A stretch of 64,000 nt of DNA from IMG/VR virus record IMGVR_UViG_3300034012_003212, positions 124,001-188,000 of that record, one strand, 5' to 3'. The notes under the pieces were generated by a model that was not told the DNA's origin, did not search any database, and was given only the letters and a program-made list of their open reading frames with translations. A program made the translations under genes and the position numbers. Of this stretch, positions 334 to 59,923 are shown one piece after another; the first letter of the stretch is position 1; every line of letters starts with the position of its first letter.

Positions 334-342
334 CTATATATC
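334..342 (-). promoter_or_regulatory. Putative late promoter motif GATATATA(G), representative copy
   Basis: The same motif recurs just upstream of many genes (see findings) and resembles the T4 late promoter TATAAATA. Confidence 0.6.
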
Positions 343-2870: not shown

Positions 2871-4904
2871 CTAGATAGTCTTTCCAATATACGGTGCCCT
2901 GGACTGTGGAACCGCATTGTCTATTATTATTCCAAGATCTGCATCTTGAACGATTGTTTGATTTAAAAATAGTTGTTGTTGATCTATACCAACGATTGTG
3001 TCCATCAATCGTATGTTCGATAGTTTTATTGGAGCAGCACGAAGAACATAATTGGAATCTGTGTCGATTTCCAAGCTCTTTCCATCTATATTCCTCAATT
3101 CAGTGAATACCTGTCGTATATCTAATGTATTCTGACTTAATTCCTGTGAATAGATCGTGAGTGTTACTTGATTAAATTCGCTGCTCACTGTTGCACATAT
3201 GGCATGGAACCATTCAGGATCTAATGCATACCCTAAATCAAACCATTCATCAACTTCATTGACATTTATACGAAAATACCTGAAGTCTCTTGAACTGATT
3301 TCAAAACTAGTATCGCCTGTTATATAATTACACACATATGATTTTGTGAACTTTGGCCTTGTTGTTGAGAATGTTGTCTCCCACGATGGGTAGAGGTCTT
3401 CTATCCATCCAGTCCAAGATGAAGTGGATGTATCATAGTGTAGTATAGAGTCTGATACGCTTTCACATGTATAGGTCCATGATGCACCCGCCTTTACTAT
3501 AGTGTTCACTAATAAAGGAAGTGAGAAGCCATTCCTGGAAGATCGTATGCTAATCTCATCCCCTTCTTTTACATTCTTGATCGGCTGGTTTAATGTCAAC
3601 GATATCGTACCTGATGGGGTATTTTTTGTTATCGACGTGAAATTTGAATCGTATGATTTTACTTGAAGTTCTGGCACCTGAGGCTTGAACCATGCAGCAA
3701 ATGTTCGATTTGATGCAGCAGGCCATGAACAATTTTGTTCATACTCAACTGCAACGTCATACGCATATCCTGGTTCAGGAAGTATGGAAGAAAGATCATA
3801 CCTAAAATTGGTGAGTACGTTGAAATTGTTCAGTAGATTCTTCTCTTCTATTATCAGATTCGGATTTATCGTAGTCCTTAACACATCGACCCTGATGGTC
3901 TTCTTCTTGAGTTGCTGTTTATTGGTCACTTTCTTTTCCTCACGATCCTGTTCAGAACCAAATTGTGTCTCAGTATTTCTTGTGATCTCAGCCAGCTGTG
4001 CAAGGCCATTTTCTTCCGTAGGAGTTCCAGTAGGAACAATGACGTTTGTGGGTTTTGGGGACCATTTGTATAGTTTGACTTTATAGAACAACTGGAGCTG
4101 CATTATGTTCCTATGCAGGAACGAATCCATGATCTCAAAGATCTTATCCATCATAGGGATGAATATGATGTCGCGCTTCTGGGGTCTTGTGCCTTCTCCG
4201 AATATCTGTTCAAAGTACATTTTATCTATGTGAACTTCAAATGGAAGGTCAGAATAATCTATCCCAAAGGGCGAAAAACTAAAATTAGCATCAGGGAACT
4301 GGTTATTCGGGACAACAACTTTTATGCACTTAGCAGGTTGCACATTCTGAAGGGTGTATTCTCTCATGATGACGTCCGTCCCAAAGGAATCAACCGTCGC
4401 CCTGTAGTAATTAGTCTCTATCCCCCATTGGCGATTGATCATTCGAGAAAGACCCTGTGCCATCTGCTTTAATTCATCTACTGCATATGGGTTATATCCA
4501 TCTGCATTGAGGAACATGGTCCCCTTTATGTTACCTATTCGGTATGGATTATAGACTGGATTAGGCCTTGACACTTCAGGGGTGATAGTGTGTGTGACAC
4601 TCATGGAAACTGAATCTATGACTGCCGGACCGGATGACTCTAGAGTATAACGGAATTTGAACCATATCTCAGATGCTGGAAGATTGACTGCATTTATATT
4701 TTCAGGGACAGATGAGTCGAAATACTCAGAGTACGTCTTATTGTCAAAAGACCATGCGAATTCCTTCTTCACGGAAGCTGAACTAGTAACTATGTCACTA
4801 ATTCCTGTGATGGTCTCCACGTCCTTCAATGGACTGTCAGAAACAAATATAGCGTAATCGCCTTCGTTTTGCAGGGTTGTTGCCATGCATTTATATATCT
4901 CCAT
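2871..4904 (-). CDS. Virion structural protein with central gp14-like neck/head-completion domain
   Basis: RPQKRDIIFIPMMDKIFEI matches the gp14 RPxxGDLIYxP..LFEI motif; long beta-rich extensions on both sides. Confidence 0.6.
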   Translation of the reverse strand: MEIYKCMATTLQNEGDYAIFVSDSPLKDVETITGISDIVTSSASVKKEFAWSFDNKTYSEYFDSSVPENINAVNLPASEIWFKFRYTLESSGPAVIDSVSMSVTHTITPEVSRPNPVYNPYRIGNIKGTMFLNADGYNPYAVDELKQMAQGLSRMINRQWGIETNYYRATVDSFGTDVIMREYTLQNVQPAKCIKVVVPNNQFPDANFSFSPFGIDYSDLPFEVHIDKMYFEQIFGEGTRPQKRDIIFIPMMDKIFEIMDSFLHRNIMQLQLFYKVKLYKWSPKPTNVIVPTGTPTEENGLAQLAEITRNTETQFGSEQDREEKKVTNKQQLKKKTIRVDVLRTTINPNLIIEEKNLLNNFNVLTNFRYDLSSILPEPGYAYDVAVEYEQNCSWPAASNRTFAAWFKPQVPELQVKSYDSNFTSITKNTPSGTISLTLNQPIKNVKEGDEISIRSSRNGFSLPLLVNTIVKAGASWTYTCESVSDSILHYDTSTSSWTGWIEDLYPSWETTFSTTRPKFTKSYVCNYITGDTSFEISSRDFRYFRINVNEVDEWFDLGYALDPEWFHAICATVSSEFNQVTLTIYSQELSQNTLDIRQVFTELRNIDGKSLEIDTDSNYVLRAAPIKLSNIRLMDTIVGIDQQQLFLNQTIVQDADLGIIIDNAVPQSRAPYIGKTI

Positions 4905-24050: not shown

Positions 24051-24120
24051 CGGGTACATGCTAGAACAGATTCCATGTAACGCTGTGAACAAACACCCCA
24101 GTTTGTGATATATAGGAAAT

Positions 24121-25905
24121 ATGAGCAGTTTTGAACAAAAGGGAACAACACCTATGTCATTGGAAAAGAACAAGAAAGGCCTATACCACCTTGATGAACT
24201 CGTTCGCAATGCGTCCGAGGAATATCTCCACGACCTACTTGATTCGCATATTGTCGTCACCGAGAAACTTGATGCGGCAAGGATACTATTTGAGTTCACG
24301 GACGATGGTGTCCACATATGGAGGAAGGACGACAGGACTCCTATGTCAATCATAGACCGAACTCTCATGAGGTACTATGAGAAGGCTATAGATCACATAA
24401 CTAGAATAACAGATTCGGTAAATGTGCCCAAGGGAACTAAGTTCGGGTGCTATTATTTCACAGATTCTGCATTGAAACTCGGGTGGTACAGCAGGGCTCC
24501 GAAGAATAACATAGTACTCACTGATGTGAGGATGATACTTGATGGCGTTGAGCAGATATTCGATGATCCTCAGACACTTAAAAAATGGGCAGGAGAACTT
24601 GCAATAGAGCCCATGCCGCATATATTCATAGGAAGACTCAATGATTCTCAAAAGAAACGGATCATTGAGCTCGCAAAAATGACTCCACACGATCTTGAGA
24701 ATGCTCTTGACGGAAAGACATTCTCAGAAAAACTCATAAACATACTCAATCCGGACGCTGGTTCATCGTTCCTCCGAAAGCATGGAGTGTATAATGTTGA
24801 TGCACTTATATTCAGGTTCAAGACTGATAAAGGTAAAACGGTAACAGCAAAGTCGATAGATGATGCATTTCAGCGGTTGTCGTTCTACAATCAACCGAAA
24901 GAAGATAGAATCCCATCTGATTTATATTCTATAGCACTTATGGAAATATGTGCATTCGTGACAGAAAAAGGCCTCGAGGACTACACTCTTAAAGAGAGGA
25001 CAACCGACTTTAGGTACCTTGAACTCGTGTGCATGATGTTCAATGATTTCATAGAGGCTAATATGGAAAGATACGACGGGGTTGATTTCTCTGAGCCGGA
25101 GTTCATGAAATCCAATGATTTTGAGATGAATTCCCGTTTTATAGAAAATGAAAAGACACTGAAGTTCATAAAGAGTAGCAGGACATTCGAACAGCTTTTT
25201 AAGATCATGCTAGCGGGTATGAGGAAAAAAAGACGCAGACCATATGGTCTCATGACTCAGCGCATGGTATCCGAGATAAATCTCTTGATCGATGCTATAC
25301 AGGAAAAGGTGCAACCCCCTGTGGTGGAAGGGTTCATGGACTTCGCAACATTCAGGGTGTTCAGGGATGATAACATGCAGCCAGTTGTATTTGAGCCCGA
25401 TACTGTGTATGCGGATATGCCAGAGGTGAAAAACATATTGTTCACAAGAAGACAGTTCTTCACAAGTGAAATGGATGCGATTGCAAAGAATGAATGTGGA
25501 AAAAATCGACTAATGTGCGTGATGTTCCCGGATAATGAATCACTTGTTTTCCCCTTTGAGTGTGTTGAGGACCAAGTTTCATCAGCATCAGAGTCCCTTC
25601 CGAAAGAAGTCAGCATTGCATGTGTGAGAACTGAAGAGGAACTTCTGGAAACAATTGAGGACCAAAAGAAGGATTGTGAAGTAGGAACAATAATGTGTGA
25701 GACCGATGATATGGAATACCTGCAGAATCTCTTTCCTTGGGCCGAGATCAGAGACATTGGAAGGCTAACATCAGAGGATAACATCGTAAGCTGCATAGAG
25801 CGAGATGATTTCTCGAGATTCAAGACCCTTTGCCCTTCATTCATCTGTAAACTTTTCATAAGAATGCAGGGAAAGTACACTGGAAACATCCAGTATAATA
25901 TATAA
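24121..25905 (+). CDS. Ligase-like nucleotidyltransferase domain fused to a degenerate cytidylyltransferase-like domain
   Basis: VTEKLDA resembles ligase motif I KxDG; C-terminal TSEDNIVSCIERDDFSRFKTLCP resembles phage cytidylyltransferase C-termini; GATATATAG at 24107-24115. Confidence 0.5.
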   Translation: MSSFEQKGTTPMSLEKNKKGLYHLDELVRNASEEYLHDLLDSHIVVTEKLDAARILFEFTDDGVHIWRKDDRTPMSIIDRTLMRYYEKAIDHITRITDSVNVPKGTKFGCYYFTDSALKLGWYSRAPKNNIVLTDVRMILDGVEQIFDDPQTLKKWAGELAIEPMPHIFIGRLNDSQKKRIIELAKMTPHDLENALDGKTFSEKLINILNPDAGSSFLRKHGVYNVDALIFRFKTDKGKTVTAKSIDDAFQRLSFYNQPKEDRIPSDLYSIALMEICAFVTEKGLEDYTLKERTTDFRYLELVCMMFNDFIEANMERYDGVDFSEPEFMKSNDFEMNSRFIENEKTLKFIKSSRTFEQLFKIMLAGMRKKRRRPYGLMTQRMVSEINLLIDAIQEKVQPPVVEGFMDFATFRVFRDDNMQPVVFEPDTVYADMPEVKNILFTRRQFFTSEMDAIAKNECGKNRLMCVMFPDNESLVFPFECVEDQVSSASESLPKEVSIACVRTEEELLETIEDQKKDCEVGTIMCETDDMEYLQNLFPWAEIRDIGRLTSEDNIVSCIERDDFSRFKTLCPSFICKLFIRMQGKYTGNIQYNI

Positions 25906-26805: not shown

Positions 26806-27366
26806 ATGAGAAAAAAGATACTGTTGTCCAAGAGTCAAGGGGATGTGACTATAGAACCCTGGCTCAGGGGTTTGGGGTTTGAGGTAGTGCCTCCTGGCAC
26901 AAGAGTGGATTCTTGGCTGCATGGAGTCGTTATAGGTGGAGGTTCTGATCCTAACAAGAAGGACGAGAAGAGGGACCGTTTAGAGCATGAACTTGTGATC
27001 ATGGCAGTAAAGGAAAGGATACCATGTCTTGGAATATGCCGCGGATCTGAAATCGTCTCGCTCTGGGGTAATGGAAGGTTGGAACCCATGTCAGATCAAC
27101 AGGCGCCATCACACAGGAATACTTGGCATGACGTTGTTGTGGATTACAGGACAATAAAGGGAGTCCTTAAACTATGGAGCAATCACCACCTTAAATTTGT
27201 AGATCCTGGAAAAATGAGAGCATGTGCCTGGTCCGGGGATGGTCTCATCGAAGCACTGATAAAAGAGGATGATAGAGTCCTAGGAGTTCTATGGCACCCT
27301 GAGAAGAGCGATGATGACGGAATAAGCAGTGTGGTTCCCTGGTTAGAATGGGTACACTCGCGTTAG
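26806..27366 (+). CDS. Class I glutamine amidotransferase-like protein (peptidase C26/PuuD family)
   Basis: IGGGSD, RD..E, LGICRG nucleophile elbow, WHPE. Confidence 0.88.
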   Translation: MRKKILLSKSQGDVTIEPWLRGLGFEVVPPGTRVDSWLHGVVIGGGSDPNKKDEKRDRLEHELVIMAVKERIPCLGICRGSEIVSLWGNGRLEPMSDQQAPSHRNTWHDVVVDYRTIKGVLKLWSNHHLKFVDPGKMRACAWSGDGLIEALIKEDDRVLGVLWHPEKSDDDGISSVVPWLEWVHSR

Positions 27367-27378
27367 TACTAATGCGTC

Positions 27379-28191
27379 CTAGTAGTCTTCATCTTCTTCT
27401 TCTTCATCATCGTCGTCTCCCACAGAAAATCTACCCTGCATAACATCCCTACAGAAACCATATTGGTTCATCTCATAATCACCGAAGAAGAAACTATCTG
27501 TTTTTATTTGTTCCGTAGATAGCAAAGATGCCAGTTCTTCAAGCTGCCAATCATCATCTCTACGATATATGTCTTCCATTGCCCTTTCATAATCACGTGC
27601 ACTGTGGACTTCTTCAACTACATTAAAAATTGTGCATGATACTATTGTGCCATCTCCTAGATCAATTTTTTCAATAAAAATGTAATCAAAACTAAGTGAA
27701 AGATCCCCTATGAATGATTGTCTATCTATGATCAATTTATTTCCAGAAAATTCTAACTCTAGGCAGTAACAAACGTCCATCCTAAGAGAACCCGATGATA
27801 TTATGGTATTTGCAACTATTGGGAAATCAAAACTGTGAGTCCTATTTCCCACATATACCTCTCCATGCACACCCATTGTTTTTGGGACTGAAAAATTACT
27901 TCCTGTGTTTCTTAAATTAACACGGGTGCCCTGACGCACTTTAATAGTATTGACTTTGTTTTCAGATATGTTTTTCATCTTTCGGTTTACCCTACTTTTT
28001 TTTGAATTCCATGGAAAGTTTTTAGCTGATATTCCCTTAGGACCCAATCCCCTTTCCATCCAACTTGCATACTCACCTGCAATTTTCTTTTTCTTTTTAC
28101 CTTTTATGTCATACAGTGATTTTTCCAGATCTATCTCATCATTTTTCATTCCAATATTTATGAGTCTTGATTTCTTTGGTCTACTTTTCAT
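27379..28191 (-). CDS. Hypothetical protein with basic N-terminus and acidic C-terminus
   Basis: Likely start MKSRPKK at 28191, since the longer ORF overlaps bS21. Confidence 0.55.
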   Translation of the reverse strand: MKSRPKKSRLINIGMKNDEIDLEKSLYDIKGKKKKKIAGEYASWMERGLGPKGISAKNFPWNSKKSRVNRKMKNISENKVNTIKVRQGTRVNLRNTGSNFSVPKTMGVHGEVYVGNRTHSFDFPIVANTIISSGSLRMDVCYCLELEFSGNKLIIDRQSFIGDLSLSFDYIFIEKIDLGDGTIVSCTIFNVVEEVHSARDYERAMEDIYRRDDDWQLEELASLLSTEQIKTDSFFFGDYEMNQYGFCRDVMQGRFSVGDDDDEEEEDEDY

Positions 28192-28263: not shown

Positions 28264-28273
28264 GATATATATC
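28264..28273. promoter_or_regulatory. Palindromic GATATATATC, putative bidirectional late promoter
   Basis: Perfect palindrome containing the late motif on both strands, between divergent genes. Confidence 0.5.
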
Positions 28274-28303
28274 ACCAGATGTACAATATAACAGAAATAG
28301 TAT

Positions 28304-28522
28304 ATGAACGATAGATCGATGGGCAACATGGGCGTTACTGTTGCAAAAGGGGAATCCATAGATAAAGCGCTTCGCCGGTTTAAGCGTAAGGTAGATTCAA
28401 CAAAGGTACTTAAAGAATACAAAGAAAGACAAGAATACACAAAACCTAGTATTAAGAAAAGACTGAAGAAGATGAGAGCAAAGCAGCGTCAGAGGGAAAT
28501 CGATATGTACTCTGCTGATTGA
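28304..28522 (+). CDS. rpsU: Ribosomal protein bS21 (phage-encoded)
   Basis: GESIDKALRRFKRK...ERQEYTKPSIKKR signature; the true start may be 28328. Confidence 0.93.
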   Translation: MNDRSMGNMGVTVAKGESIDKALRRFKRKVDSTKVLKEYKERQEYTKPSIKKRLKKMRAKQRQREIDMYSAD

Positions 28523-28556: not shown

Positions 28557-29630
28557 ATGTCAATAGGATTCACTAAAGATTTTGATACATCGCATTTTAA
28601 TGAACAGGAGTTCGTCAGGGCGTGGGGGTCTATATCTTCACTTGGAAAAGATTTCGTAAAGGAGATGAAGAGCAACATCGGAACCGATATTGTTCTCAGA
28701 GAAGGTATAAGCAATAATTCCGTGATCTATGCGAAAGCATCTCTTTTCCTATTGGGGTACAGCCAGGTAAATGATGGGGATTCTGAGAACTACTTTGATA
28801 AGTATACCGGAGATGCGGTTGAAAAATTCAAAAAGCTGTATAGTGATGAGTTCGAGACGATAGACGTCAATAGGAACATAGACTCTGAATTTTTTAACGC
28901 ATTGTCGAACGTGTTTTCGATGACAGATTCAAATGCGGTCACGATGTTAAAAAAGGAACTTGATTCAAGAAATCCTGTAAATCAACAAGACCAGGGATAT
29001 AAAGGAGATTCAGGGGATTTAGAGAAAATAGGAAAGAATGATTCGACTGCTTTGCAGAAGATGATTTCGACCGGAGTGATTGCCCATCCAGACTTTCAAC
29101 AAACGAGGATAGTTTTACCAAAACCGTCTGGAAAATACGAAGAAGAATTAGTATATGGGGATAATTATCCTGCAAAAGATGAATATTTTTACTACGCAAA
29201 GCAGTCTGTTATATACAGTTACACGTACGATGGTGAAACACAAGTTAGCCCTAATTTTAAGGTAAAGGAATTCCGCTGTCCTATAACAGATATCATACTC
29301 ATAAATCCATTTCTTGTTGAAATACTTGAAAGGCTGAGGACCACATTCAATGGCAGATCTGTTAATATATTGAGTGGATACAGGAGCCCAAAATACAATG
29401 AAATTATCCGTAGGGATAGCATCCGTAAAGACGCAAACAAAAAGGGGAACGTCGCTATAAACTCTCAACATAAATTTGGAAATGCTGCAGATATTTTGAT
29501 AGATGGTGTTAAGCCTAGCGCAGTGTTTAAATTCCTTAACCCGTGGTGGCAAGGCGGTTTGGGGAAATATCCAGGTTTCACACACGTAGATGTAAGAAAT
29601 GAATTGGGATCTGGCCGATCCAGATGGTAA
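28557..29630 (+). CDS. Peptidoglycan-binding domain plus M15A zinc peptidase
   Basis: FKVKEFRC, LSGYRS..YN, SQHKFGNAADI and FTHVDVR motifs. Confidence 0.85.
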   Translation: MSIGFTKDFDTSHFNEQEFVRAWGSISSLGKDFVKEMKSNIGTDIVLREGISNNSVIYAKASLFLLGYSQVNDGDSENYFDKYTGDAVEKFKKLYSDEFETIDVNRNIDSEFFNALSNVFSMTDSNAVTMLKKELDSRNPVNQQDQGYKGDSGDLEKIGKNDSTALQKMISTGVIAHPDFQQTRIVLPKPSGKYEEELVYGDNYPAKDEYFYYAKQSVIYSYTYDGETQVSPNFKVKEFRCPITDIILINPFLVEILERLRTTFNGRSVNILSGYRSPKYNEIIRRDSIRKDANKKGNVAINSQHKFGNAADILIDGVKPSAVFKFLNPWWQGGLGKYPGFTHVDVRNELGSGRSRW

Positions 29631-29891: not shown

Positions 29892-30167
29892 ATGAACATA
29901 ACAGTAAAAAGGTTCTATTCCAGCAGTTCATCACCGTGCAGTCTCCTGTCTCCTGTATTTGACCTCCTTCGAACGAGATTCCAAGGAGAAGTACAATTTG
30001 TTGACATCGATGTAAACATAGATAAAAATGAGAGTAAAATCTATGATGTTCGCGGTGTTCCTTTCGTTGTTGTAGAATCTTCAGGGAAAAAACTGAAGCA
30101 ACTTTCCGGAAAGTATGACTACCAATACTACGAGCAACATATACTAGAGTCGCTAGAATCCATTTAA
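29892..30167 (+). CDS. Thioredoxin-fold protein (SxxC)
   Basis: FYSSSSSPC, IDVN and VRGVP cis-Pro loop. Confidence 0.75.
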   Translation: MNITVKRFYSSSSSPCSLLSPVFDLLRTRFQGEVQFVDIDVNIDKNESKIYDVRGVPFVVVESSGKKLKQLSGKYDYQYYEQHILESLESI

Positions 30168-30188: not shown

Positions 30189-30884
30189 ATGAATGTAAAG
30201 TTTGTATCCATAACTTCTTCTGATGTGCAGGATGAGGACGGAAACCATTTCTCTCCGGAAGAATTCATAGTATACATCGCAAGGGTTAGTAATCCTTCAA
30301 ATCAGATGAACAGGGAAACCTCTGATAGGCTACTACGATATCTCATACAGCATAAACACTGGTCTCCGTTTGAGTTTGTTGATATGACCGTCGAGATAAC
30401 AACAAGAAGAAGTATAGCAGCTCAGATATTACGGCATAAGAGTTTTTCTTTCCAGGAATTCAGTATGCGATATAGCAATGCTCAGGAGATAGAAGAAATT
30501 GAGCTCCGCAAACAGGCCGAAAAGAATCGACAGTCTTCGACTGAATCCTTCGATCCTATACTTGATAATGTGGTTCTTGGAGAACATGGTAGTGAAGGGG
30601 GGATAAAGGCATCCGATGCCATAAGCACATTCCTTGAATCTTCCATGAAATTATACGCAGAATTACTAAGAGCGGGAGTTGCGCGGGAAGTTGCAAGAGA
30701 CATTCTGCCTCTTGCGACAGAGACTCGAATGTACATGAAAGGGAGTGTGAGAAGCTGGATACACTACCTCGAGTTACGAATGAAGAGCGATACACAAAAA
30801 GAACACAGGGAGATTGCAGAAAGCATCTACTCGATATTCAAAGAAAAGTTTCCTATCATACACAGATCTTTATCCAAAGACTGA
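30189..30884 (+). CDS. thyX: Flavin-dependent thymidylate synthase
   Basis: HWSPFE, QILRHKSFSFQEFSMRY, AREVAR and TQKEHR motifs. Confidence 0.95.
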   Translation: MNVKFVSITSSDVQDEDGNHFSPEEFIVYIARVSNPSNQMNRETSDRLLRYLIQHKHWSPFEFVDMTVEITTRRSIAAQILRHKSFSFQEFSMRYSNAQEIEEIELRKQAEKNRQSSTESFDPILDNVVLGEHGSEGGIKASDAISTFLESSMKLYAELLRAGVAREVARDILPLATETRMYMKGSVRSWIHYLELRMKSDTQKEHREIAESIYSIFKEKFPIIHRSLSKD

Positions 30885-34115: not shown

Positions 34116-35120
34116 ATGCCCCACATGGCGAACTACCTCGTCAATACCCCCGATTGGTCAGACACACCAGAATTAAAAGAATATGTGCTTTCAGAAATGA
34201 AGGCCGAAAGATGGGGAAGGGCTCTAAAAGCTCTACGCATTCTTCAACAACGAGGTGAACATGAGTTTGTCGAAGCTCGGTTCGATTTTGTCCTTCATTA
34301 TGCAGCAGTGAGCGATGATCTGCTCACTGGATTTACTATACCTAGGCCACCGGAAACTGATACGCTTGTATTTGGGCCTCCCGCAGGATTAGCGGGGATA
34401 GGAGACAATCTTATTTTTTCAACCGTTCCTGCTGCCGCAAGAGCTTCCGGATATAAGAAGATTCTACTTACCAATACCCACGGACTTTCAGGTGAAGTCT
34501 TTGATTTCGTATGGGGGAAAAAGGAAGGAATCCATGCTATTGATGGTGTGACAGATGAACCTCCAACGAATAACCAAGTCTGGATGTGGGATATACTACA
34601 GTCTGTATACAGCCCAAAGCGTAATTTGAGTATGTTGCAGAGGGTATGTATGAGTTATGGCCTTGATCCCAATCTCTCGCATGACACGCCCATAGTTGAT
34701 TACTACTATAGATATAACAAGGAATTGCACGATCGAGTAAAGAATCGTGTGGTCATAGATGTTGGCACAAATAGTGCATCTGGGCGATTTTCGTCTATTG
34801 ATCCGTCCCGTGTTATTGCTGCTCTTGAAGATATAGGAATAGATGACTTCTGTATAGTTAAACCCAAGGATCCATCAGAAAAATGGGGATGCATTGAAAT
34901 ACCTGATAGAGAAGTAATAGAGTGTGACAATATAGAAGACTACGCAAATGTTGTAGAGTTTTCGGATAGATTCTTGACGATATCGAATGGCGGGTACTGG
35001 ATAGCTGGTGCACTAAGAAAGGGTGATCAGGTGAAGAAAACTTGGCACATAGAAGTTAAAGGGGCGGAACAAGGATACCCGAGTTGGATGACACTCCCCT
35101 TTTCACTGATGACCTGTTGA
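34116..35120 (+). CDS. GT9/heptosyltransferase-like glycosyltransferase
   Basis: GIGDNLIFS motif and C-terminal FLTISNGGYWIAGAL motif. Confidence 0.55.
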   Translation: MPHMANYLVNTPDWSDTPELKEYVLSEMKAERWGRALKALRILQQRGEHEFVEARFDFVLHYAAVSDDLLTGFTIPRPPETDTLVFGPPAGLAGIGDNLIFSTVPAAARASGYKKILLTNTHGLSGEVFDFVWGKKEGIHAIDGVTDEPPTNNQVWMWDILQSVYSPKRNLSMLQRVCMSYGLDPNLSHDTPIVDYYYRYNKELHDRVKNRVVIDVGTNSASGRFSSIDPSRVIAALEDIGIDDFCIVKPKDPSEKWGCIEIPDREVIECDNIEDYANVVEFSDRFLTISNGGYWIAGALRKGDQVKKTWHIEVKGAEQGYPSWMTLPFSLMTC

Positions 35121-35147
35121 TATATACAGTGAAAAAATAATTTCACG

Positions 35148-35726
35148 ATGAAGGTACTATCATTCTTAGAATTTCTAAAGGAATCTGAGGAAGCAGAAAC
35201 ACCAATAGATTCTATTGAGCCGATTGAAGATGATGTGGAAGGGGAAACCAATGAAGACCTCCGCGCATGGTTCGGAAAAGGAAAAAAGGGTGGATACGGC
35301 GGCGGGGGCTGGGATAGGTATAGCACAACAGGAGAAAGGATTGGTAAATGCGGAGGCGCAGATGAAGGCGATCCGTATCCAGTGTGCATGTCCAGAGAAA
35401 TGGCCGAGAAGCTAGGAAAAAAAGGAATAGCTGCATATGTTAAAAAGAAGAGGGCAGCAAAGAAGAAGGGCGGAGATTCAAAAAAAGGTCTCGAGAGATC
35501 TAAAGGACAGTCTCCTATATGGACTAAGATAAAAATAGATGAATCCTCGATAGAGCAGATTGAGCTAGTATTAGAAAAGAACGTCCCCACTGATAAGAAA
35601 AAATGGGCATACTATATCGCACAGGCAAAGAAAAAGTTTGATGTGTATCCATCTGTTTATGCCAATGCTTGGGCGGCTAAGATGTATAAAAAAGCTGGGG
35701 GCGGTTGGAGGAAGATAGAGAAATAG
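35148..35726 (+). CDS. Basic Gly/Lys-rich T4-like head protein
   Basis: Starts MKVLSFLEFLKES; EDLRAWF, AKKKFDVYPS.YAN and YKKAGGGWR motifs; GATATATAC upstream. Confidence 0.65.
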   Translation: MKVLSFLEFLKESEEAETPIDSIEPIEDDVEGETNEDLRAWFGKGKKGGYGGGGWDRYSTTGERIGKCGGADEGDPYPVCMSREMAEKLGKKGIAAYVKKKRAAKKKGGDSKKGLERSKGQSPIWTKIKIDESSIEQIELVLEKNVPTDKKKWAYYIAQAKKKFDVYPSVYANAWAAKMYKKAGGGWRKIEK

Positions 35727-35762
35727 TTACACTGCTAGTGATATATAGAAAAAAAAACAAGT

Positions 35763-36404
35763 ATGAACGTATTAACATATTCCGAATTCCTTCTTGAAGC
35801 AGAAGAACACAAAATGGGAAGTTCTAGCAAGATTCAAGAAGTCTATAAGAAAGGCACAAAAGAAATCGATCGTCTTATAATGGAGGCGTCAGGAACAGAT
35901 TCAGAAATTATAGATTCTATGATGGATGAATTCATCAAAACTAAAGCCCTAATGGAAGAGGCGGTTACCACGCATGAGTTGGTAAAAAAGCAGACAAAGG
36001 GAAAGATCAATGAGGCCTTTGATGCCGAACAAAGGTTTATAACAAGAGTTATTCAGACGGTGAAATATACGTTCACCTTTAGCAAATACATAAAGGGGCA
36101 TGAAAAGGAACAGAAGACTGTGAACTACGAATCTGTTTTGAAAGATTTGACATCCCTTTTTCCCCAAATCAATGAAGCTTTACAAGAGATCATAGAAAAA
36201 CACACTGAAGTTAAAACAGTCACAAAATCTGAGATCGAGGGCAGTTTGGATAGATCTCGCATAGAGTTAAATGAATCTCTTGCCGATATTTTAGAGTCAA
36301 TTGCAAAGAAGATAAGAGGAATATACGTGAAGCTCGCAAATAAGTTGAACAAAGTGTCAGATAAGATTGATGCTAAGTTGGAAAAGTACAAGGAACTCGT
36401 ATAG
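35763..36404 (+). CDS. Coiled-coil protein with capsid-targeting-like N-terminus
   Basis: Starts MNVLTYSEFLLEA; GATATATAG at 35740-35748. Confidence 0.65.
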   Translation: MNVLTYSEFLLEAEEHKMGSSSKIQEVYKKGTKEIDRLIMEASGTDSEIIDSMMDEFIKTKALMEEAVTTHELVKKQTKGKINEAFDAEQRFITRVIQTVKYTFTFSKYIKGHEKEQKTVNYESVLKDLTSLFPQINEALQEIIEKHTEVKTVTKSEIEGSLDRSRIELNESLADILESIAKKIRGIYVKLANKLNKVSDKIDAKLEKYKELV

Positions 36405-36617: not shown

Positions 36618-37769
36618 ATGCAAAAAGAAAAAGAGATACCCCTTTTCAAGGTCTACATGTCAGATGAATCAATAGAGAGGGTGGATTCCGTCCTTAGCTC
36701 CGGATTCATAGGTCAAGGTGAAGTCGTAGATGAATTCGAGAACATGATAAAGGATATATTCCAGTGGGATTATATTCTTACAGTTAACTCAGCTACGTCT
36801 GCAGAACATCTTGCCCTCCACATGCTCAAGACCACTCGAGGGCTGAAACCCGGAGATGAGGTTCTTGCCACACCACTGACATGCACTGCATCAAACTGGC
36901 CGATACTTGCAAATGGATTAAAAATCAAATGGGTTGACGTTGATCCAAACACCCTTAATATGGATATAGATGATCTAGCGAGAAAGATAGGCCCAGAGAC
37001 CAGGGCAGTAATGCTAGTACACTGGGGAGGATTTCCTAATGATCTCGATCGTGTGAAACAGGTTATACAAAACGCCGAATCCATATACGGAAACAAAATC
37101 TATGTGATAGAAGATTGTGCCCATGCCATGGGGAGCACATACAAGGGGAGGAGAATTGGTACACATGATAACATCTGTACATTTAGCTTACAGGCGATAA
37201 AGCATGTTACATCCGGAGACGGCGGCATTCTGTTTCTTCCGTCAGATTCGGCTGACCTATACAAGAAGGGTAAACTCCTCAGGTGGTATGGAATAGACAG
37301 GGAGACCAACAGGAAGGATTTCCGATGTGAGGCAGATGTTGCAGAATGGGGATTCAAGTTCCATATGAATGACATAAATGCAGCAATTGGTATAGGTAAT
37401 ATGAAGCAGATGAGTCATATAATAGCAGGCCACAATAGTAATGGTAAATTCTACGATAGGGAGCTAAAGGGAATCGATGGTGTGACAGTTCTCAGAAAGA
37501 ACATACCATATGAATATGAGTCATCGTTCTGGATTTATAGCATACTCGTTGAGAGGAAGATGGACTTTCAAAGGGCGATGAAAGATAGAGGAATAGCATG
37601 CAGCCAAGTGCACGAGAGGAATGATATACACACAACAGTCAGGGAATACAAGTCTCTACTTCCATCGCTGGATACGATAACACCGAGGCTTAGTTCTATA
37701 CCCGTGGGTTGGTGGGTTACCGATGAAGATCGCGAAAGGATCGTAGAAGCGATAAAGAAGGGGTGGTAA
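36618..37769 (+). CDS. DegT/DnrJ/EryC1/StrS PLP-dependent sugar aminotransferase
   Basis: VNSATSA, VHWGG, EDCAHA, FSLQAIKH (PLP lysine) and GDGG motifs. Confidence 0.93.
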   Translation: MQKEKEIPLFKVYMSDESIERVDSVLSSGFIGQGEVVDEFENMIKDIFQWDYILTVNSATSAEHLALHMLKTTRGLKPGDEVLATPLTCTASNWPILANGLKIKWVDVDPNTLNMDIDDLARKIGPETRAVMLVHWGGFPNDLDRVKQVIQNAESIYGNKIYVIEDCAHAMGSTYKGRRIGTHDNICTFSLQAIKHVTSGDGGILFLPSDSADLYKKGKLLRWYGIDRETNRKDFRCEADVAEWGFKFHMNDINAAIGIGNMKQMSHIIAGHNSNGKFYDRELKGIDGVTVLRKNIPYEYESSFWIYSILVERKMDFQRAMKDRGIACSQVHERNDIHTTVREYKSLLPSLDTITPRLSSIPVGWWVTDEDRERIVEAIKKGW

Positions 37770-37770
37770 G

Positions 37771-38634
37771 ATGTTACATTACATCGCGTCGGTATATACG
37801 GGCGTTCGACAGAATAAATTCGTCAATGAGATACTTGCTAACGACCCGTCTCATTACGTGAAGATACATCTTGAACGGCTGAGGCTTTATGGTGATAGCA
37901 ACATACAACGTGTTACATTTGCCATAAGCCCATCATCTGATCCAGAAAGGGATCGTTCTGTCATGGAGTACGCATCTTCAGTTGATTTAGGCTTTGCCGT
38001 GACGGACTCATACATAAAAGAAAATAACAAGTATTTTTCGTATGGGTGTTGGGAAGACTGCGTTCGTAGGAATATGGGCGGACTTGATTTTTTCCTCATA
38101 GAGGATGATTACTTCCCGGCCGTAAAGGGATTCTATGAACCATTCGTCAATGGTTTAAATTCTAAAGAGGGGGTTGCGTATTCATGTCAGTGGTATAAGA
38201 ATAGACATGCTGCTATAAGTAATGGAGTTCTTTCAGTAAAGGCTGCAAAAAAACACATAGAAGAATTTGGAGAATCATTGCTTCTTTCTAAGTTTGACGC
38301 AGTAGTATATCCTCCGGAAATGCCAGAAGATAGAGACCGAATAGAGATGCTGTACATAAAGAAGAATTCCCCTCATCAGCAGAGGAGGCCGCTCATGAAA
38401 CAAAGGCCAAAACCGATCTCAATAAAAAATATGCCACCGCCTGGATTTAAGGTTATCCATCCTGGGGTTTTTGCACAGGAGAGGTTTCTACAGGGATACG
38501 AAGCCCTTGGTTATAGTTTTGTTGATCTGATGGATGAGTACATGCACCCATTTCTTTCGGATGCCAAAACTGTAAAAGAGTATGGAAAAAAGGGCGGGAA
38601 GGTTTTAATAGACTGTGATTTTTACAAGCAATGA
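37771..38634 (+). CDS. GT-A fold glycosyltransferase-like protein
   Basis: SYGCW and FLIEDDY motifs; paralogous to 39314-40138. Confidence 0.6.
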   Translation: MLHYIASVYTGVRQNKFVNEILANDPSHYVKIHLERLRLYGDSNIQRVTFAISPSSDPERDRSVMEYASSVDLGFAVTDSYIKENNKYFSYGCWEDCVRRNMGGLDFFLIEDDYFPAVKGFYEPFVNGLNSKEGVAYSCQWYKNRHAAISNGVLSVKAAKKHIEEFGESLLLSKFDAVVYPPEMPEDRDRIEMLYIKKNSPHQQRRPLMKQRPKPISIKNMPPPGFKVIHPGVFAQERFLQGYEALGYSFVDLMDEYMHPFLSDAKTVKEYGKKGGKVLIDCDFYKQ

Positions 38635-39317
38635 AATTCCTCATACTCCTCTTCTATTACGAGAGGCCTGAAATGCTAAATAGTGCAATCCAGTCTGTTC
38701 TACAGCAGGACTACCACGAGTGGGAAGTTTTTTTGATAGACGATGGCGTAAAATTCAAGGCAAGAGATCACGTGGACTTGAGATGTTTTTCGGAAAATAA
38801 ACTAACACTTGTTGAAATAGGAGACAACGAACAAGTAAAACTCAAGCGCCAGGAAAGACAATCATCATTCGGTGGTAGCATATTTGGTGCGTTCGCAAAT
38901 ACTGCTATGTCAACAACTGATGCGACTCACGCCATAATGTTATGTGATGATGATGAACTCAAACCCGATTATCTATCAAAACTTCGGGATTGGTATTCAT
39001 GTAATGATTCTAATTATTCATATTGCCACCTTGAATTCAAAGATCCGAACAATGGATCATCTGTTGAGAACGACTACACCAGATACTTGAATTCAAAATC
39101 ACACCCAATAAATCCAGTCAATGAGGTCGATTCATCTCAAGTATCTTGGTCTGTTGAGGCATGGAGGAATAGTGGAATACATTTCCCATACCCACAGACA
39201 TCACACCTAGATAGATCCATATTTCAGCAGATGTATTCCTCCTGGGGCGATTGCAGATTTAATGGCATAACCGGTCAGATAAAAGGAATACATAAAGAAC
39301 AATTGATACACAGATGA
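38631..39317 (+). CDS. GT2-family glycosyltransferase
   Basis: YERP, SVLQQDY, IDDG and LCDDD motifs. Confidence 0.85.
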   Translation: MKFLILLFYYERPEMLNSAIQSVLQQDYHEWEVFLIDDGVKFKARDHVDLRCFSENKLTLVEIGDNEQVKLKRQERQSSFGGSIFGAFANTAMSTTDATHAIMLCDDDELKPDYLSKLRDWYSCNDSNYSYCHLEFKDPNNGSSVENDYTRYLNSKSHPINPVNEVDSSQVSWSVEAWRNSGIHFPYPQTSHLDRSIFQQMYSSWGDCRFNGITGQIKGIHKEQLIHR

Positions 39318-40138
39318 TAAATTATATAGTTTCTTTATATTTTGGGCAGCGCAGAAACACAATGGTTCAATCATGTGTTGATGCAGATCCATACTATCTT
39401 TTCAAATGCCACCTTCAAGCGATTGCCAGGTATTCAATGAAAGATGTCCATAAATTCACATTTGTGGTCAATCCATCAGGAGACCAAGAACTCGATGAAG
39501 GTTCTAAAAAAATCCTGGAAGTTTTCAGTAACACGCCAAAACTAAAAGAAAAGAACATAGAAATATTGTTTAACCCAGACAACCGGCACATATCATATGG
39601 TGCATGGAATTTTGGTGTTGAGAATGGCCTAGATGATCCAAAGACGAAATACTTTTTCTTGTTAGAGGATGACTATGTTCCTACTGGAGATGAATTCTAC
39701 GAACCATACGTTAAAAAATCACAGGATGATATAGCATACGTTTGTCAGATGTGGTCTCCGTCAAAAAATCCAAAGGCAAAAACAGCAGGTCGCGTTGCCA
39801 TAACAAATGGCCTATTGAATGCAGATGCAGCCAGAAAATCAAAAGAATTAAACGGGTCATGCTTTGATCTTCCAGAAACACCAGATTATAAGCAGCTCTC
39901 AAATTCAAAGGTTATGTCTGATATAAATAAGAAGTACATATTATGCGGTGTTGCGCAGAACTTCTTCATAAGGCATTTCCTCAATATGGGGATGAGAATA
40001 GTTGACCTAGGCGAAGGGTGGTCTCAATTATTCTTGGATTCAACTGGGGTTAAGCCATATAAAGAAGGCCAAGTATCATACATAGCCCCGATACATGAAT
40101 ATAGGGAGATAGACATGGGGGAATTCCATGGAGATTGA
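39314..40138 (+). CDS. GT-A fold glycosyltransferase-like protein
   Basis: SYGAW and FLLEDDY motifs. Confidence 0.6.
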   Translation: MINYIVSLYFGQRRNTMVQSCVDADPYYLFKCHLQAIARYSMKDVHKFTFVVNPSGDQELDEGSKKILEVFSNTPKLKEKNIEILFNPDNRHISYGAWNFGVENGLDDPKTKYFFLLEDDYVPTGDEFYEPYVKKSQDDIAYVCQMWSPSKNPKAKTAGRVAITNGLLNADAARKSKELNGSCFDLPETPDYKQLSNSKVMSDINKKYILCGVAQNFFIRHFLNMGMRIVDLGEGWSQLFLDSTGVKPYKEGQVSYIAPIHEYREIDMGEFHGD

Positions 40139-41111
40139 TGAAATAAAACTCAATGAACAAAGACAGATTTTCAGTGAGATGATTCATGGATTTAAGGAGT
40201 ATGAAGAGACGATATTCGCACCGAGTCCCGTGATATGGAGCGCACTATCTGATAGGTTCACTGAGGATATCAATAATTTTGGAATAGGCGATTTCCAGGC
40301 AGATTACAAGAATGATTTTTTTGGCACCACCTTTGGATTTGGATCAACCATAACTCCAGGAAGGACGACTGAATTTGATTCTATGTTATGGTCCGTGTGG
40401 AACAATATCCTTGAGCGCGATTCGAAGATATCAAAAAAACTTGGAATTGAGAGTATAGTATCGAGGACGATGCCGCTTGAGACTTCTCCGAATCGAACAC
40501 TCGACCCATCTAAGATTTCCGGGAGACCGGGCCGTGGAATGAAAGACGTTCCCATCAATTGGGACTATCTATTTTCACTCGACACAATACTTTACATTTC
40601 TGAGAGAATTCCTGAGATATTAACTGGAAGTGTGGCAGTATGTGAACTCGGTGCCGGCTGGGGTAGAATTGCACATTATCTATCACAGATAAATCCAAAA
40701 ATACGGTACTACATATTTGACATACCAACATCATTGATTGTTTCATACTGTTACCTAAAGGATTCGGGTGCAAATGTTCATGATTTCAGCATAACAAAGA
40801 GTTCAGAATTCAATGATCTTCGTGATCCAGGAATTTATTGTATGCTCAGCGGGGATTTGGATAAGATACGCGGAAAGGAATTCGCGCTCTTTGTGAACCA
40901 GGCTTCTTTTCAGGAGATGACCCCTGAACAAGTTTCTGGGTATTTCGATATAATCGATAGGACCTCTGAAAATTTCTACACGTTCCAGAGGTATATGGAT
41001 CTTTCTATGTCATATGAATCATATCCGGTTAAGAATAACTGGGAAGTTATATCAGACGGTGATAGCATTTTTAATCCGTTGTGGTTTGAACAATTTATTA
41101 AAATAAACTAG
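40128..41111 (+). CDS. Putative sugar O-methyltransferase
   Basis: ELGAGWGR SAM motif, FDIP and NQASFQEM...YF. Confidence 0.8.
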   Translation: MEIDEIKLNEQRQIFSEMIHGFKEYEETIFAPSPVIWSALSDRFTEDINNFGIGDFQADYKNDFFGTTFGFGSTITPGRTTEFDSMLWSVWNNILERDSKISKKLGIESIVSRTMPLETSPNRTLDPSKISGRPGRGMKDVPINWDYLFSLDTILYISERIPEILTGSVAVCELGAGWGRIAHYLSQINPKIRYYIFDIPTSLIVSYCYLKDSGANVHDFSITKSSEFNDLRDPGIYCMLSGDLDKIRGKEFALFVNQASFQEMTPEQVSGYFDIIDRTSENFYTFQRYMDLSMSYESYPVKNNWEVISDGDSIFNPLWFEQFIKIN

Positions 41112-41119
41112 AGGTACGT

Positions 41120-41809: not shown

Positions 41810-41903
41810 AAAACCAATAGGTTTTTCATATACCTTTTGCAAGTATAGTCAAGAATAACAAAGGCGCATGACGCGAGTATAATACAAAAAACAAGGAGAT
41901 GCT

Positions 41904-42116
41904 ATGGATAGAAATATTTTAATGGATAAAATCAGAGATGCATTTGAGACTTCATCTGAAGATGTGAAATGTGTAGAATGCGATAGTCTTCACTTTGTTG
42001 CCAGAATTCGCCTCAGGAGATTGAGTCCAATAACGAGCCCAACTGGACAGGAAATCATACTACCTCAGGAAATCTACGTGTGTTCGAAGTGTGGCACATC
42101 ACTACCCGAGGCATGA
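41904..42116 (+). CDS. Small Zn-ribbon protein
   Basis: CVEC...SPTGQE...CSKCG. Confidence 0.65.
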   Translation: MDRNILMDKIRDAFETSSEDVKCVECDSLHFVARIRLRRLSPITSPTGQEIILPQEIYVCSKCGTSLPEA

Positions 42117-42150
42117 TTTTTTAGCCTAGCATTTTGATATATACTTGAAT

Positions 42151-42654: not shown

Positions 42655-42738
42655 TGTTTTCATACTAGAAATTCTTTTCTTATTTTAGATCGGAATCTGA
42701 GGATTCCTTAACATTTTTGTTAAAAATAAGGAAAACAT

Positions 42739-43212: not shown

Positions 43213-43218
43213 CAGCAT

Positions 43219-43728: not shown

Positions 43729-43778
43729 AGTTTTCTCGATAAAAGTAACAACGAATGCATAGTATTATATAATATGGC

Positions 43779-44363: not shown

Positions 44364-44364
44364 A

Positions 44365-45775: not shown

Positions 45776-45786
45776 AGGCATTTGCA

Positions 45787-55408: not shown

Positions 55409-55464
55409 GCGTATTATTTTTTTCTATATATCATTTGTTTTGGGAAAAAAACGGAGCAATACAG

Positions 55465-59913: not shown

Positions 59914-59923
59914 CGCCTCCTTG

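What the first reader, a model, noticed from the sequence alone, without database searches (positions are those of the whole stretch)
28264..28522. Phage bS21 under a palindromic late motif, apparently lacking the anti-SD-occluding tyrosine
Seen: bS21 follows GATATATATC, and its C-terminus is KPSIKKRLKKMRAKQRQ. Known: phage bS21 genes are described in Bacteroidota phages and are expressed late. In Flavobacterium ribosomes, bS21 (Tyr54 in a KAxYxQ-like segment) helps sequester the anti-Shine-Dalgarno sequence. By my from-memory alignment the equivalent residue here is Gln. Inference: swapping in phage bS21 could free the anti-SD and retune translation initiation. Caveat: the SD-bearing genes in this window look mostly early.
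Basis: partly seen in the sequence, partly recalled or inferred. Interest (0 to 1): 0.65.

Follow-up and report, generated by a model that had tools for sequence, protein, structure and literature searches.

The report
Late-promoter phage bS21 without Tyr54
A roughly 300-kb lake phage carries its own copy of ribosomal protein bS21 behind its late-gene promoter motif. The copy does lack the tyrosine that hides the anti-Shine-Dalgarno sequence in Bacteroidia, but most likely because it resembles the tyrosine-less bS21 of Ignavibacteria-like bacteria, not because it is a special unlocking device.

Summary
Window 28304-28522 (+) encodes a full-length bS21 (Pfam 65 bits). GATATATATC lies 30 nt upstream. 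An ungapped alignment to F. johnsoniae bS21 puts Gln61 at Tyr54, with no aromatic residue within 7 positions.

"Late motif" is supported indirectly. G-ATATATA lies 4-40 nt upstream of 48 ORFs, including tail sheath, portal, prohead protease, endolysin and the TerL operon. It is conserved at orthologous sites in a sister phage.

The interpretation, that the phage swap frees the anti-SD, is weakly supported.
- The protein is closest to Ignavibacteria/Kapaibacterium bS21, which carry Arg at position 54. Median E is 3.7e-14 against that class and 2.9e-10 against Tyr54-type Bacteroidia. The tree, however, is unresolved.
- SD-like motifs precede 28% of phage genes. That matches Ignavibacteria samples (26-38%), not a Bacteroidia-type genome (3%).
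- No motif-bearing (late) gene has a strong SD (0/48, against 27/282 other genes).
- The sister phage has His at position 54.

Five of six population variants in the gene are synonymous, so it is under purifying selection. A bS1-like gene elsewhere in the genome sits behind the same motif.

Most likely this is a late-expressed substitute for host bS21 that serves SD-less, A-rich late mRNAs. It is a new member of a known kind and of modest interest.

The parts
28304..28522 (+). Phage bS21 gene (72 aa from the first ATG; further in-frame ATGs at 28319 and 28328; homology to cellular bS21 begins at Met9 = 28328). Gln61 (CAG, 28484-28486) occupies the Tyr54 position of F. johnsoniae bS21.
   Evidence: Population variants are 5 synonymous and 1 R64M.
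28264..28273 (.). Perfect 10-bp palindrome GATATATATC. It presents the G-ATATATA late-promoter-like core on both strands, in the 112-nt divergent spacer between bS21 and the minus-strand gene 27379-28191.
   Evidence: The 11-mer is identical in sister phage L002 and unchanged in lake contigs of runs X2 and X3.
27379..28191 (-). Divergently oriented gene, 270 aa with an acidic C-terminal tail, no family match. Its start lies 74 nt from the palindrome. It is syntenic in L002.
28557..29630 (+). Peptidase M15-type protein (probable cell-wall hydrolase), 34 nt downstream of bS21 on the same strand. It is followed by an 88-aa ORF, a thioredoxin (29892-30167) and ThyX (30189-30884). This is a possible co-transcribed run.
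   Evidence: The gene order is the same in L002.
26806..27366 (+). Glutamine amidotransferase / peptidase C26-like gene upstream of the divergent pair. Part of the conserved neighbourhood.
4892..4898 (-). ATATATA motif copy 5 nt before the ATG of a 671-aa head-closure-like gene (2871-4886). That gene heads a tight operon ending in the large terminase (357-2255).
335..341 (-). Motif copy (tttGATATATAg) 30 nt before the ATG (window 304) of the tail sheath gene, which runs leftwards out of the window.
   Evidence: L197, tail sheath, E 6.8e-106.
24108..24114 (+). Motif copy 6 nt before the ATG of a 594-aa gene (24121-25905). The orthologous gene in L002 also has the motif.
55425..55431 (-). Motif copy 16 nt before the ATG of a 580-aa ATPase gene (53666-55408). 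A 683-aa HNH/tail-fibre-like gene follows.
35741..35747 (+). Motif copy (gtgATATATAgaaaaaaaaacaagtATG) before gene 35763-36404. This is a typical A-rich, SD-less leader. A further copy at 35120-35126 precedes gene 35148-35726.

Best explanation
This is a functional phage copy of small-subunit protein bS21 in a huge lake phage (260,658-bp record, CheckV 88% complete). It is transcribed from the phage's late-type promoter element, T-rich + G + ATATATA, here embedded in a conserved palindrome. The mRNA has an A-rich leader with no Shine-Dalgarno sequence. The protein is inferred to take the bS21 site on the host 30S platform late in infection, probably together with a co-encoded bS1-like protein made from the same promoter type. 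There it would replace or replenish host bS21 and favour the phage's SD-less, A-rich or nearly leaderless late mRNAs. Unlike the rpsU genes of its closest cellular relatives, the phage gene has no SD and starts with ATG. It should therefore escape any SD-based feedback acting on host rpsU. The missing Tyr54 is best read as lineage background. The protein belongs with the basic-tailed, tyrosine-less bS21 of non-Bacteroidia members of the Bacteroidota/FCB group (Ignavibacteria, Kapaibacterium), so the likely host already lacks that tyrosine. Shown: gene, family, residue, motif recurrence and conservation, purifying selection, similarity ranking, SD statistics. Inferred: late timing, ribosome incorporation, host identity, effect on initiation.
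For: Family and residue. Purifying selection: 6 variants in four lake metagenomes, 5 of them synonymous, including CAG>CAA at Gln61. Motif: 48 ORFs have it 4-40 nt upstream, with consensus T-rich, G at -1 in 27 of 48, then an A-rich stretch, and strong enrichment. Motif-bearing genes include tail sheath, portal, prohead protease and endolysin, the terminase operon and a collagen-like fibre protein. Helicase, exonuclease, DNA polymerase and RNR genes lack it. It is conserved at three orthologous sites in sister contig L002. Host-type affinity: the best 80 cellular matches are almost all Ignavibacteria, Kapaibacterium or Melioribacter MAGs (45-61% identity), with KAxRR at positions 51-55. Median E is 3.7e-14 against 66 genomes of that class and 2.9e-10 against 77 genomes of the class of G305, whose top six hits have Tyr (five) or His (one, G305 itself) at position 54. 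SD use, measured with one crude method: phage 28% core motifs, Ignavibacteria-type samples 26-38%, the Bacteroidia-type genome 3%. The literature gives 32% for Ignavibacteria (PMC10783764). Phage GC (0.416) equals that of Ignavibacteriaceae G002 (0.42). Late-motif genes: 0 of 48 have a strong SD against 27 of 282 others, Fisher p 0.02. bS1-like gene behind the same motif. Phage bS21 linked to late expression and ribosome substitution: PMC9723584 and PMC6375957 as cited.
Against: No direct host link was found (no spacer, no prophage, no RNA run). The bS21 tree has 64 columns and leaves the phage pair in a polytomy. AU tests reject neither joining it to the aromatic-54 clade (p 0.39) nor to the Ignavibacteria-type clade (p 0.44). 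Greater similarity to Ignavibacteria could reflect slow evolution of their bS21 rather than origin. The phage has Gln, and its sister His, where Ignavibacteria have an invariant Arg, so it is not a plain copy of that type either. Its helix-loop segment KRKVDSTK differs from their KKKYERSG. The bS21 copy of the motif is atypical: T follows it, as in only 7 of 48 copies. Late timing rests on shared motif only. The terminase's nearest cultured relatives include phages of Flavobacteriia (Tenacibaculum, Flavobacterium) at 27-31% identity.
Confidence: 0.55

Rival explanations
1. The host is a Bacteroidia bacterium whose ribosomes hide the anti-SD. The tyrosine-less phage bS21 displaces host bS21, the 16S 3' tail is released, and SD-bearing phage mRNAs gain an advantage.
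For: Gln sits at the Tyr54 position. In F. johnsoniae, bS21(Y54A) is viable and raises strong-SD reporters 1.7- to 3-fold in vivo and 3-fold in vitro (PMC9976891). The phage does carry SD-led genes, 28% with core motifs and some very strong, far above a Bacteroidia-type genome (3%). The AU test does not reject grouping with the aromatic-54 clade (p 0.39). The sister phage has His, which Chen et al. count as an aromatic-ring variant. Terminase relatives include Flavobacteriia phages.
Against: SD-bearing genes are not the late class: 0 of 48 motif genes have a strong SD. The strongest SDs sit in families of small genes without the late motif, so a late-made bS21 comes too late for them unless it is packaged in the virion. 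All 61 bS21 of known Bacteroidetes bS21 phages keep an aromatic residue (PMC9723584). The protein is systematically closer to Ignavibacteria-class bS21. Its C-terminal helix is strongly basic (net +7 over the 12 residues, against +3 in F. johnsoniae), unlike the Bacteroidia signature (PMC7797042).
Confidence: 0.12
2. The host is Ignavibacteria-like, but the phage protein still retunes anti-SD availability there. Replacing the invariant host Arg54 by Gln or His, together with the altered helix-loop segment, changes how the 16S 3' tail is held. This would shift the balance between SD-led host mRNAs and SD-less phage late mRNAs.
For: Ignavibacteria-type rpsU genes carry a conserved GAGGTGA 6-8 nt before a TTG or GTG start. 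This is the arrangement taken as a sign of bS21 autoregulation through the anti-SD in Flavobacteriia and Chlorobia (PMC9976891), so bS21 may modulate the anti-SD there even without Tyr54. The phage differs from those hosts exactly at position 54 and in the loop where Chen et al. found phage-bacterium divergence. Late phage leaders lack SDs.
Against: No structure or biochemistry exists for Ignavibacteria ribosomes. Position 54 varies (Gln or His) between the two known phage members, which argues against a finely tuned contact. Ignavibacteriaceae bS18 lacks most of the pocket signature (V32, Q37, L50, T56).
Confidence: 0.15
3. The protein acts off the ribosome, for example as a small basic RNA-binding protein or chaperone for phage transcripts, or as a decoy for a host factor. 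Alternatively it is a passenger gene with little effect.
For: bS21 is small, basic and exchangeable. The phage form has extra N-terminal residues and an acidic tail (EIDMYSAD) absent from cellular homologues. No ribosome-incorporation data exist for this lineage.
Against: The full-length profile match conserves the rRNA-binding core (GESIDKALRRFKRK...KPS). Five of six variants are synonymous. Synteny and promoter are conserved in a 72%-identical sister. A phage bS21 has been shown to enter E. coli ribosomes (Mizuno 2019, as cited in PMC9976891).
Confidence: 0.08

Closest known systems
bS21-encoding huge phages of freshwater Bacteroidetes (Chen et al. 2022, ISME Commun, PMC9723584)
   Same: A lake phage of about 300 kb with one bS21 gene. 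The gene is linked to late functions (there by metatranscriptomes, here by a promoter motif shared with structural genes). The proposed mechanism is the same: substitution into host ribosomes. The N-terminal helix-loop region is diverged.
   Different: Those phages keep an aromatic residue at position 54 (54 Tyr, 7 other aromatic, of 61). Their bS21 lies on the reverse strand inside the TerL/portal/protease/MCP block, and their GC is 31-34%. Here position 54 is Gln and GC is 41.6%. The neighbours are a C26 amidotransferase, an M15 peptidase, thioredoxin and ThyX, and TerL is 26 kb away. IMG/VR Tyr54-type phage bS21 score only 40-58 bits.
Flavobacterium johnsoniae bS21 and the anti-SD pocket (Jha et al. 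2021, PMC7797042; McNutt et al. 2023, PMC9976891)
   Same: Same protein family. The alignment is ungapped over residues 4-54, and the KPS anchor and first helix are conserved.
   Different: Tyr54 is replaced by Gln. The C-terminal helix is far more basic. The gene has no SD, whereas host rpsU in Flavobacteriia carries a strong one. Similarity is lower (36.5 bits) than to Ignavibacteria-type proteins (60-72 bits by tblastn).
bS21 of Ignavibacteria, Kapaibacterium and Melioribacter
   Same: These have the highest similarity found (45-61% identity). They have a basic C-terminal helix with no tyrosine, Arg55 is retained, and overall length is similar.
   Different: The host-type signatures KKKYERSG and KAxRR are not kept (phage: KRKVDSTK and RAKQR). 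The phage gene starts with ATG and has no GAGGTGA SD. The phage pair forms its own branch (100/96) outside the host clade.
Phage T4-type late promoters (TATAAATA -10 element; from general knowledge, not tested here)
   Same: A short AT-rich element close to the start of late structural genes with no evident -35 partner, reused dozens of times.
   Different: The sequence differs (T-rich, G, ATATATA). Thirteen of 48 copies lie only 4-7 nt before the ATG, implying almost leaderless mRNAs. No sigma or RNA polymerase partner was identified. Transcription starts are unmapped.
Huge phages carrying rpS1 and rpS21 (Al-Shayeb et al. 2020, PMC7162821)
   Same: bS21 and a multi-S1-domain protein are co-encoded. 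The reported link between phage rpS1 and scarce SD motifs fits the SD-poor late genes here.
   Different: The N-terminal extension here is at most 8 residues and is not rich in basic or aromatic residues. SD motifs are not absent but confined to a subset of genes.

Membership tests
Ribosomal protein bS21 (Pfam PF01165) | Full-length match to the family profile above the curated cut-off | tested here: met
   65 bits against a cut-off of 27, profile positions 2-55 of 55. 28 bS21 chains in the PDB matched.
Bacteroidia-type, anti-SD-occluding bS21 | Signature aromatic residue (Tyr54, F. johnsoniae numbering) that stacks on A1534 | tested here: not met
   Gln61 aligns with Tyr54 in an ungapped alignment, with no aromatic within 7 residues. 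The sister phage has His.
Bacteroidia-type, anti-SD-occluding bS21 | C-terminal part markedly less basic than in other phyla | tested here: not met
   Net charge is +7 over the 12 residues after KPS, against +3 in F. johnsoniae 43-54. The pI of the C-terminal part (residues after the KPS motif) is 10.6. The criterion is from PMC7797042.
Bacteroidia-type, anti-SD-occluding bS21 | Phylogenetic placement within the Bacteroidia bS21 clade | tested here: inconclusive
   The aromatic-54 clade (85/92) excludes the phage pair in the best tree, but the AU test does not reject joining them (p 0.39).
Ignavibacteria/Kapaibacterium-type bS21 | KAxRR motif with Arg54-Arg55 and KKKYERSG in the helix-loop | tested here: not met
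   The phage has RAKQR (Gln54, Arg55) and KRKVDSTK. It is the closest type by similarity, but the phage protein is not a member by signature.
Ignavibacteria/Kapaibacterium-type bS21 | Highest sequence similarity, or placement with that clade | tested here: inconclusive
   The similarity ranking clearly favours it (median E 3.7e-14 against 2.9e-10) and it is nearest by tree path. The clade itself is not supported or rejected (AU p 0.44).
Chen et al. 2022 bS21 phage clades a-e | bS21 on the reverse strand inside the conserved TerL/portal/protease/MCP block | tested here: not met
   The neighbours are amidotransferase, M15 peptidase, thioredoxin and ThyX. TerL is at window 357-2255, and portal and protease lie outside the window.
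Chen et al. 2022 bS21 phage clades a-e | Late-stage expression of bS21 | not testable with these tools
   No RNA run holds this sequence. Only indirect support comes from the shared promoter motif.
Phage late promoter (functional class) | Recurrent short element immediately upstream of structural and lysis genes, absent from replication genes, conserved in relatives | tested here: met
   Transcription starts and timing were not measured.

The most novel reading that the evidence does not exclude
The phage infects a Bacteroidia host with a sequestered anti-SD. It uses a naturally tyrosine-less bS21, perhaps delivered in the virion or made early from the palindromic promoter, to unlock SD recognition. 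Its SD-led gene families would then be translated on reprogrammed ribosomes that host mRNAs cannot exploit. This would be a natural counterpart of the Y54A mutant.
Probability: 0.1. Interest if true: 0.8.

Novelty: new member of a known kind. Interest (0 to 1): 0.38.

Why it matters
Phage-encoded bS21 is the commonest viral ribosomal protein, yet its effect on initiation is untested. This lineage adds a tyrosine-less, Ignavibacteria-like form with a clear late-promoter context, nearly leaderless late genes and a co-encoded bS1-like protein. If the host is Ignavibacteria-like, it would be one of the few handles on phages and translation control in that uncultured-rich group. If the host were Bacteroidia, it would be a natural experiment on anti-SD sequestration. 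Either way, the two gene classes (SD-led small genes and SD-less motif genes) offer a ready-made reporter set.

Tried and rejected
1. The exact 10-mer as a recurrent motif was rejected: 2 copies in the genome, and one-mismatch counts at chance level. Only the 7-8-nt core recurs.

2. Intergenic 8-mers pointed to a possible CRISPR-like repeat. It is a 9-nt-period collagen-like coding repeat at the contig ends and at 99-103 kb, with no array.

3. The bS21 tree and two AU tests do not resolve the origin.

4. The phage epimerase against 201 genomes of the Ignavibacteria class gave 38-49% identity everywhere. This was uninformative, so I did not run the Bacteroidia counterpart.

5. The INPHARED phage collection gave only two weak bS21 hits. 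Terminase hits of 27-36% went to huge uncultured phages, Sphingomonas PAU and Tenacibaculum/Flavobacterium phages, which gives no decisive host clue.

6. The ESM Atlas lists the nearest clusters only as "commonest Bacteroidota", with no finer resolution.

8. The search for sequencing runs found no RNA runs, so expression timing and transcription starts could not be examined.

9. No bS18, bS6 or IF3 homologue was found in the phage record.

10. A short upstream ORF after the motif is not conserved in the sister phage and was dropped.

11. Structure prediction, complex prediction and the large exhaustive protein search were not run.

Full report
**What is there**

The window is bases 124,001-188,000 of a 260,658-bp IMG/VR virus record. 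CheckV puts it at 88% complete and GC is 41.6%. Near-identical DNA occurs in lake and freshwater metagenomes from 14 studies, and no RNA run holds it.

ORF 28304-28522 (+) encodes 72 residues. It matches Pfam Ribosomal_S21 over the whole profile (E 4.8e-18, 65 bits against a cut-off of 27) and 28 solved bS21 chains.

There are three in-frame ATGs, at 28304, 28319 and 28328. Cellular homologues begin at the position of the third, Met9. The closest relative, P0002, was called from the second.

P0002 is 72% identical and comes from a 13.5-kb Logan contig, L002. The gene order there is the same: amidotransferase, minus-strand genes, bS21, M15 peptidase, small ORF, thioredoxin, ThyX.

Contigs from four other lake metagenomes were laid on the region. 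They show six differences inside bS21. Five are third-position synonymous changes, including CAG>CAA in the Gln61 codon, and one is R64M. The gene is therefore under purifying selection.

**The tyrosine**

phmmer aligns residues 11-61 to residues 4-54 of 7jil_z (F. johnsoniae bS21) without a gap. The invariant KPS anchors the alignment. Tyr54 therefore corresponds to Gln61. The nearest aromatic residue is Tyr69, in an acidic tail that the sister phage does not conserve.

Jha et al. describe Tyr54 as a phylum signature that stacks on A1534 (PMC7797042). McNutt et al. showed that Y54A is viable and raises strong-SD reporters 1.7- to 3-fold (PMC9976891). Chen et al. found an aromatic residue at this position in all 61 bS21 of their Bacteroidetes phages (PMC9723584).

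The sister phage has His (CAT) here, so the position varies within this small lineage.

**The motif**

The exact 10-mer occurs only twice in the genome, and one-mismatch matches in the window are at chance level. Its core is a different matter.

- [AG]TATATA has a called gene start 4-45 nt downstream at 39 of 107 sites. The figure is 2.6% for random positions and 2-17% for control heptamers of the same composition.
- Scanning ORFs directly gives 48 genes with the motif 4-40 nt upstream. The consensus is a T-rich stretch, G at -1 (27 of 48), ATATATA, a non-T base, then an A-rich leader.
- Thirteen of the 48 have the ATG only 4-7 nt after the motif. If the motif acts as a -10-like element, those mRNAs would be almost leaderless. 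This is inference.
- Motif-bearing genes include the tail sheath, portal, prohead protease and endolysin. They also include a head-closure-like gene heading a tight operon that ends in the large terminase, a collagen-like 1504-aa protein and a bS1-like protein.
- Helicase, exonuclease, DNA polymerase and ribonucleotide reductase genes lack the motif.
- In L002 the motif recurs at three orthologous positions. Upstream of bS21 the 11-mer GATATATATCA is identical while the rest of the spacer has diverged.

"Late motif" is therefore a reasonable label, though timing was not measured. The bS21 copy is unusual in being a perfect palindrome, so the core is present on both strands of the divergent spacer. 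T follows it, which is seen in only 7 of 48 copies. Whether the palindrome drives both genes or binds a dimeric regulator is open.

**Whose bS21 does it resemble?**

A scan of one genome per species returned 578 confirmed relatives. The best 80 are almost all Ignavibacteria, Ignavibacteriales, Melioribacter, Stygiobacter or Candidatus Kapaibacterium MAGs, at 45-61% identity. All of these have KAxRR, that is Arg at position 54.

As an independent check I searched evenly drawn genome samples.

| Sample | Genomes | Median E |
|---|---|---|
| Class of the Ignavibacteriaceae genome G002 | 66 | 3.7e-14 |
| Class of the marine Bacteroidetes genome G305 | 77 | 2.9e-10 |

The top six hits in the G305 class have Tyr (five) or His (one, G305 itself) at position 54. 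Forty-one of 66 genomes against 2 of 77 reach E 1e-13. Tyr54-type phage bS21 from IMG/VR score lower still.

The tree is not decisive. With 64 usable columns the two phages form their own branch (100/96) in a polytomy. Their nearest neighbours by path are Ignavibacteria and Kapaibacterium, and the aromatic-54 clade (85/92) excludes them. AU tests reject neither alternative (p 0.39 and 0.44).

The phage protein is also not a plain Ignavibacteria-type copy. It has Gln where they have an invariant Arg, and KRKVDSTK where they have KKKYERSG. Chen et al. found phage and bacterial bS21 to diverge in the same region.

**Shine-Dalgarno use**

I applied one crude gene caller and one scoring scheme to every genome. 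The score was the fraction of genes with GGAG, GAGG or AGGA upstream of the start.

| Genome | Fraction with core motif |
|---|---|
| Phage | 28% |
| Ignavibacteriaceae G002 (GC 0.42, as the phage) | 33% |
| G003 | 38% |
| Kapaibacterium (31 genes only) | 26% |
| Bacteroidia-type genome G305 | 3% |

A published survey gives 32% for Ignavibacteria (PMC10783764). This agrees with an Ignavibacteria-like host.

The class distribution is more telling. None of the 48 motif-bearing genes has a strong SD (pairing energy -8 or lower), against 27 of 282 other genes (Fisher p 0.02). At the -6 threshold the difference is only a trend (p 0.11). The strongest SDs sit in families of small genes with conserved leaders and no late motif. 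A bS21 made from a late promoter therefore accompanies SD-less mRNAs.

**Host ribosome context**

I verified the numbering against 7jil_w. Ignavibacteriaceae bS18 lacks most of the pocket signature: it has V32, Q37, L50 and T56 in place of Y32, K37, F50 and N56. Kapaibacterium keeps F50, N56 and Q58.

Ignavibacteria-type rpsU genes begin with TTG or GTG and carry a conserved GAGGTGA 6-8 nt upstream. McNutt et al. take the same arrangement in Flavobacteriia and Chlorobia as a sign of bS21 autoregulation through the anti-SD. bS21 may therefore influence anti-SD availability in these lineages even without Tyr54. I keep that as a separate rival explanation.

The phage gene has ATG and no SD, so it would escape such feedback. 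The phage record contains no bS18, bS6 or IF3 homologue. It does encode a 378-aa protein with three S1 domains whose best solved matches are bS1. This fits the reported association of phage rpS1 with scarce SD motifs (PMC7162821).

**Conclusion**

The late-promoter context is supported indirectly.

The idea that the missing tyrosine is a phage device for freeing the anti-SD is possible but not favoured. The simplest reading is a late-expressed bS21 of the tyrosine-less, basic-tailed kind, matching an Ignavibacteria-like host. It would work with a bS1-like protein on SD-less late messages.

Host identity is the hinge. It could not be settled with the data to hand.

This is a new member of a known kind (phage bS21). 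Its useful particulars are a defined promoter motif, two translational gene classes, and a likely host group for which phages are little studied.

Noticed in passing
outside the window: G000:C1:63252-64388 (-), locus L191: The phage encodes a 378-aa protein with three S1 domains. Its best solved-structure matches are ribosomal protein bS1 (E 7e-14). It sits 40 nt behind a tttGATATATAg motif copy, so it is a second initiation-related ribosomal protein homologue under the late-type element.
   Followed up: partly
loci L007-L039 (Ignavibacteria/Kapaibacterium rpsU genes): Cellular rpsU genes of this group start with TTG or GTG. Nearly all carry a conserved GAGGTGA 6-8 nt upstream. This resembles the rpsU SD taken as a mark of bS21 autoregulation in Flavobacteriia and Chlorobia, although these bS21 lack Tyr54.
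   Followed up: partly
window 59136-60610 (-); also genome 10-19 kb (outside the window): Families of small genes share conserved SD-bearing leaders. AACTATCATAAGGAGCTGAACA-ATG occurs three times in the window. ACCCATAAGACAAGAAAGGAGACAGGG-ATG occurs about five times elsewhere. They look like an early-type gene class distinct from the motif-bearing class.
   Followed up: partly
window 4886, 24121, 42151, 57557, 58554 and others (ATG 4-7 nt after ATATATA): Thirteen of 48 motif-bearing genes have the start codon only 4-7 nt after the motif, which implies nearly leaderless late mRNAs. A 163-aa ORF at about 58063-58554 (-) with such a start was missed by my gene caller.
   Followed up: partly
genome ends (1-300 and about 259-260.6 kb) and 99,094-103,608 (L194), outside the window: Collagen-like Gly-X-Y repeats of 9-nt period occur in these places. 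A 1504-aa protein gives 15 Pfam Collagen hits. The contig breaks in such repeats at both ends, which probably explains the incomplete assembly.
   Followed up: partly
window 36618-46740 (+): Sugar-modification cluster: DegT-type aminotransferase, family-2 glycosyltransferase, GNAT acetyltransferase fused to DUF1289, and an NAD-dependent epimerase/dehydratase. These may be genes for modifying a surface or DNA sugar.
   Followed up: partly
window 27381-27461: The acidic tail (DDDDEEEEDEDY) of the divergent 270-aa gene recruits many unrelated metagenome contigs. The depth spike there in the read layout is a low-complexity artefact. A 3-nt deletion variant at 27392 occurs in three runs.
   Followed up: no
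outside the window: genome 22678-22750, 193327-193400, 194172-194246: Three tRNA genes (Lys-TTT, Met-CAT, Arg-CCT) lie here. There are none in the window.
   Followed up: no
window 51592-53643 (-): A 683-aa protein combines an HNH-endonuclease-like region with weak tail-fibre-like matches. It lies directly downstream of the motif-bearing 580-aa ATPase gene.
   Followed up: no
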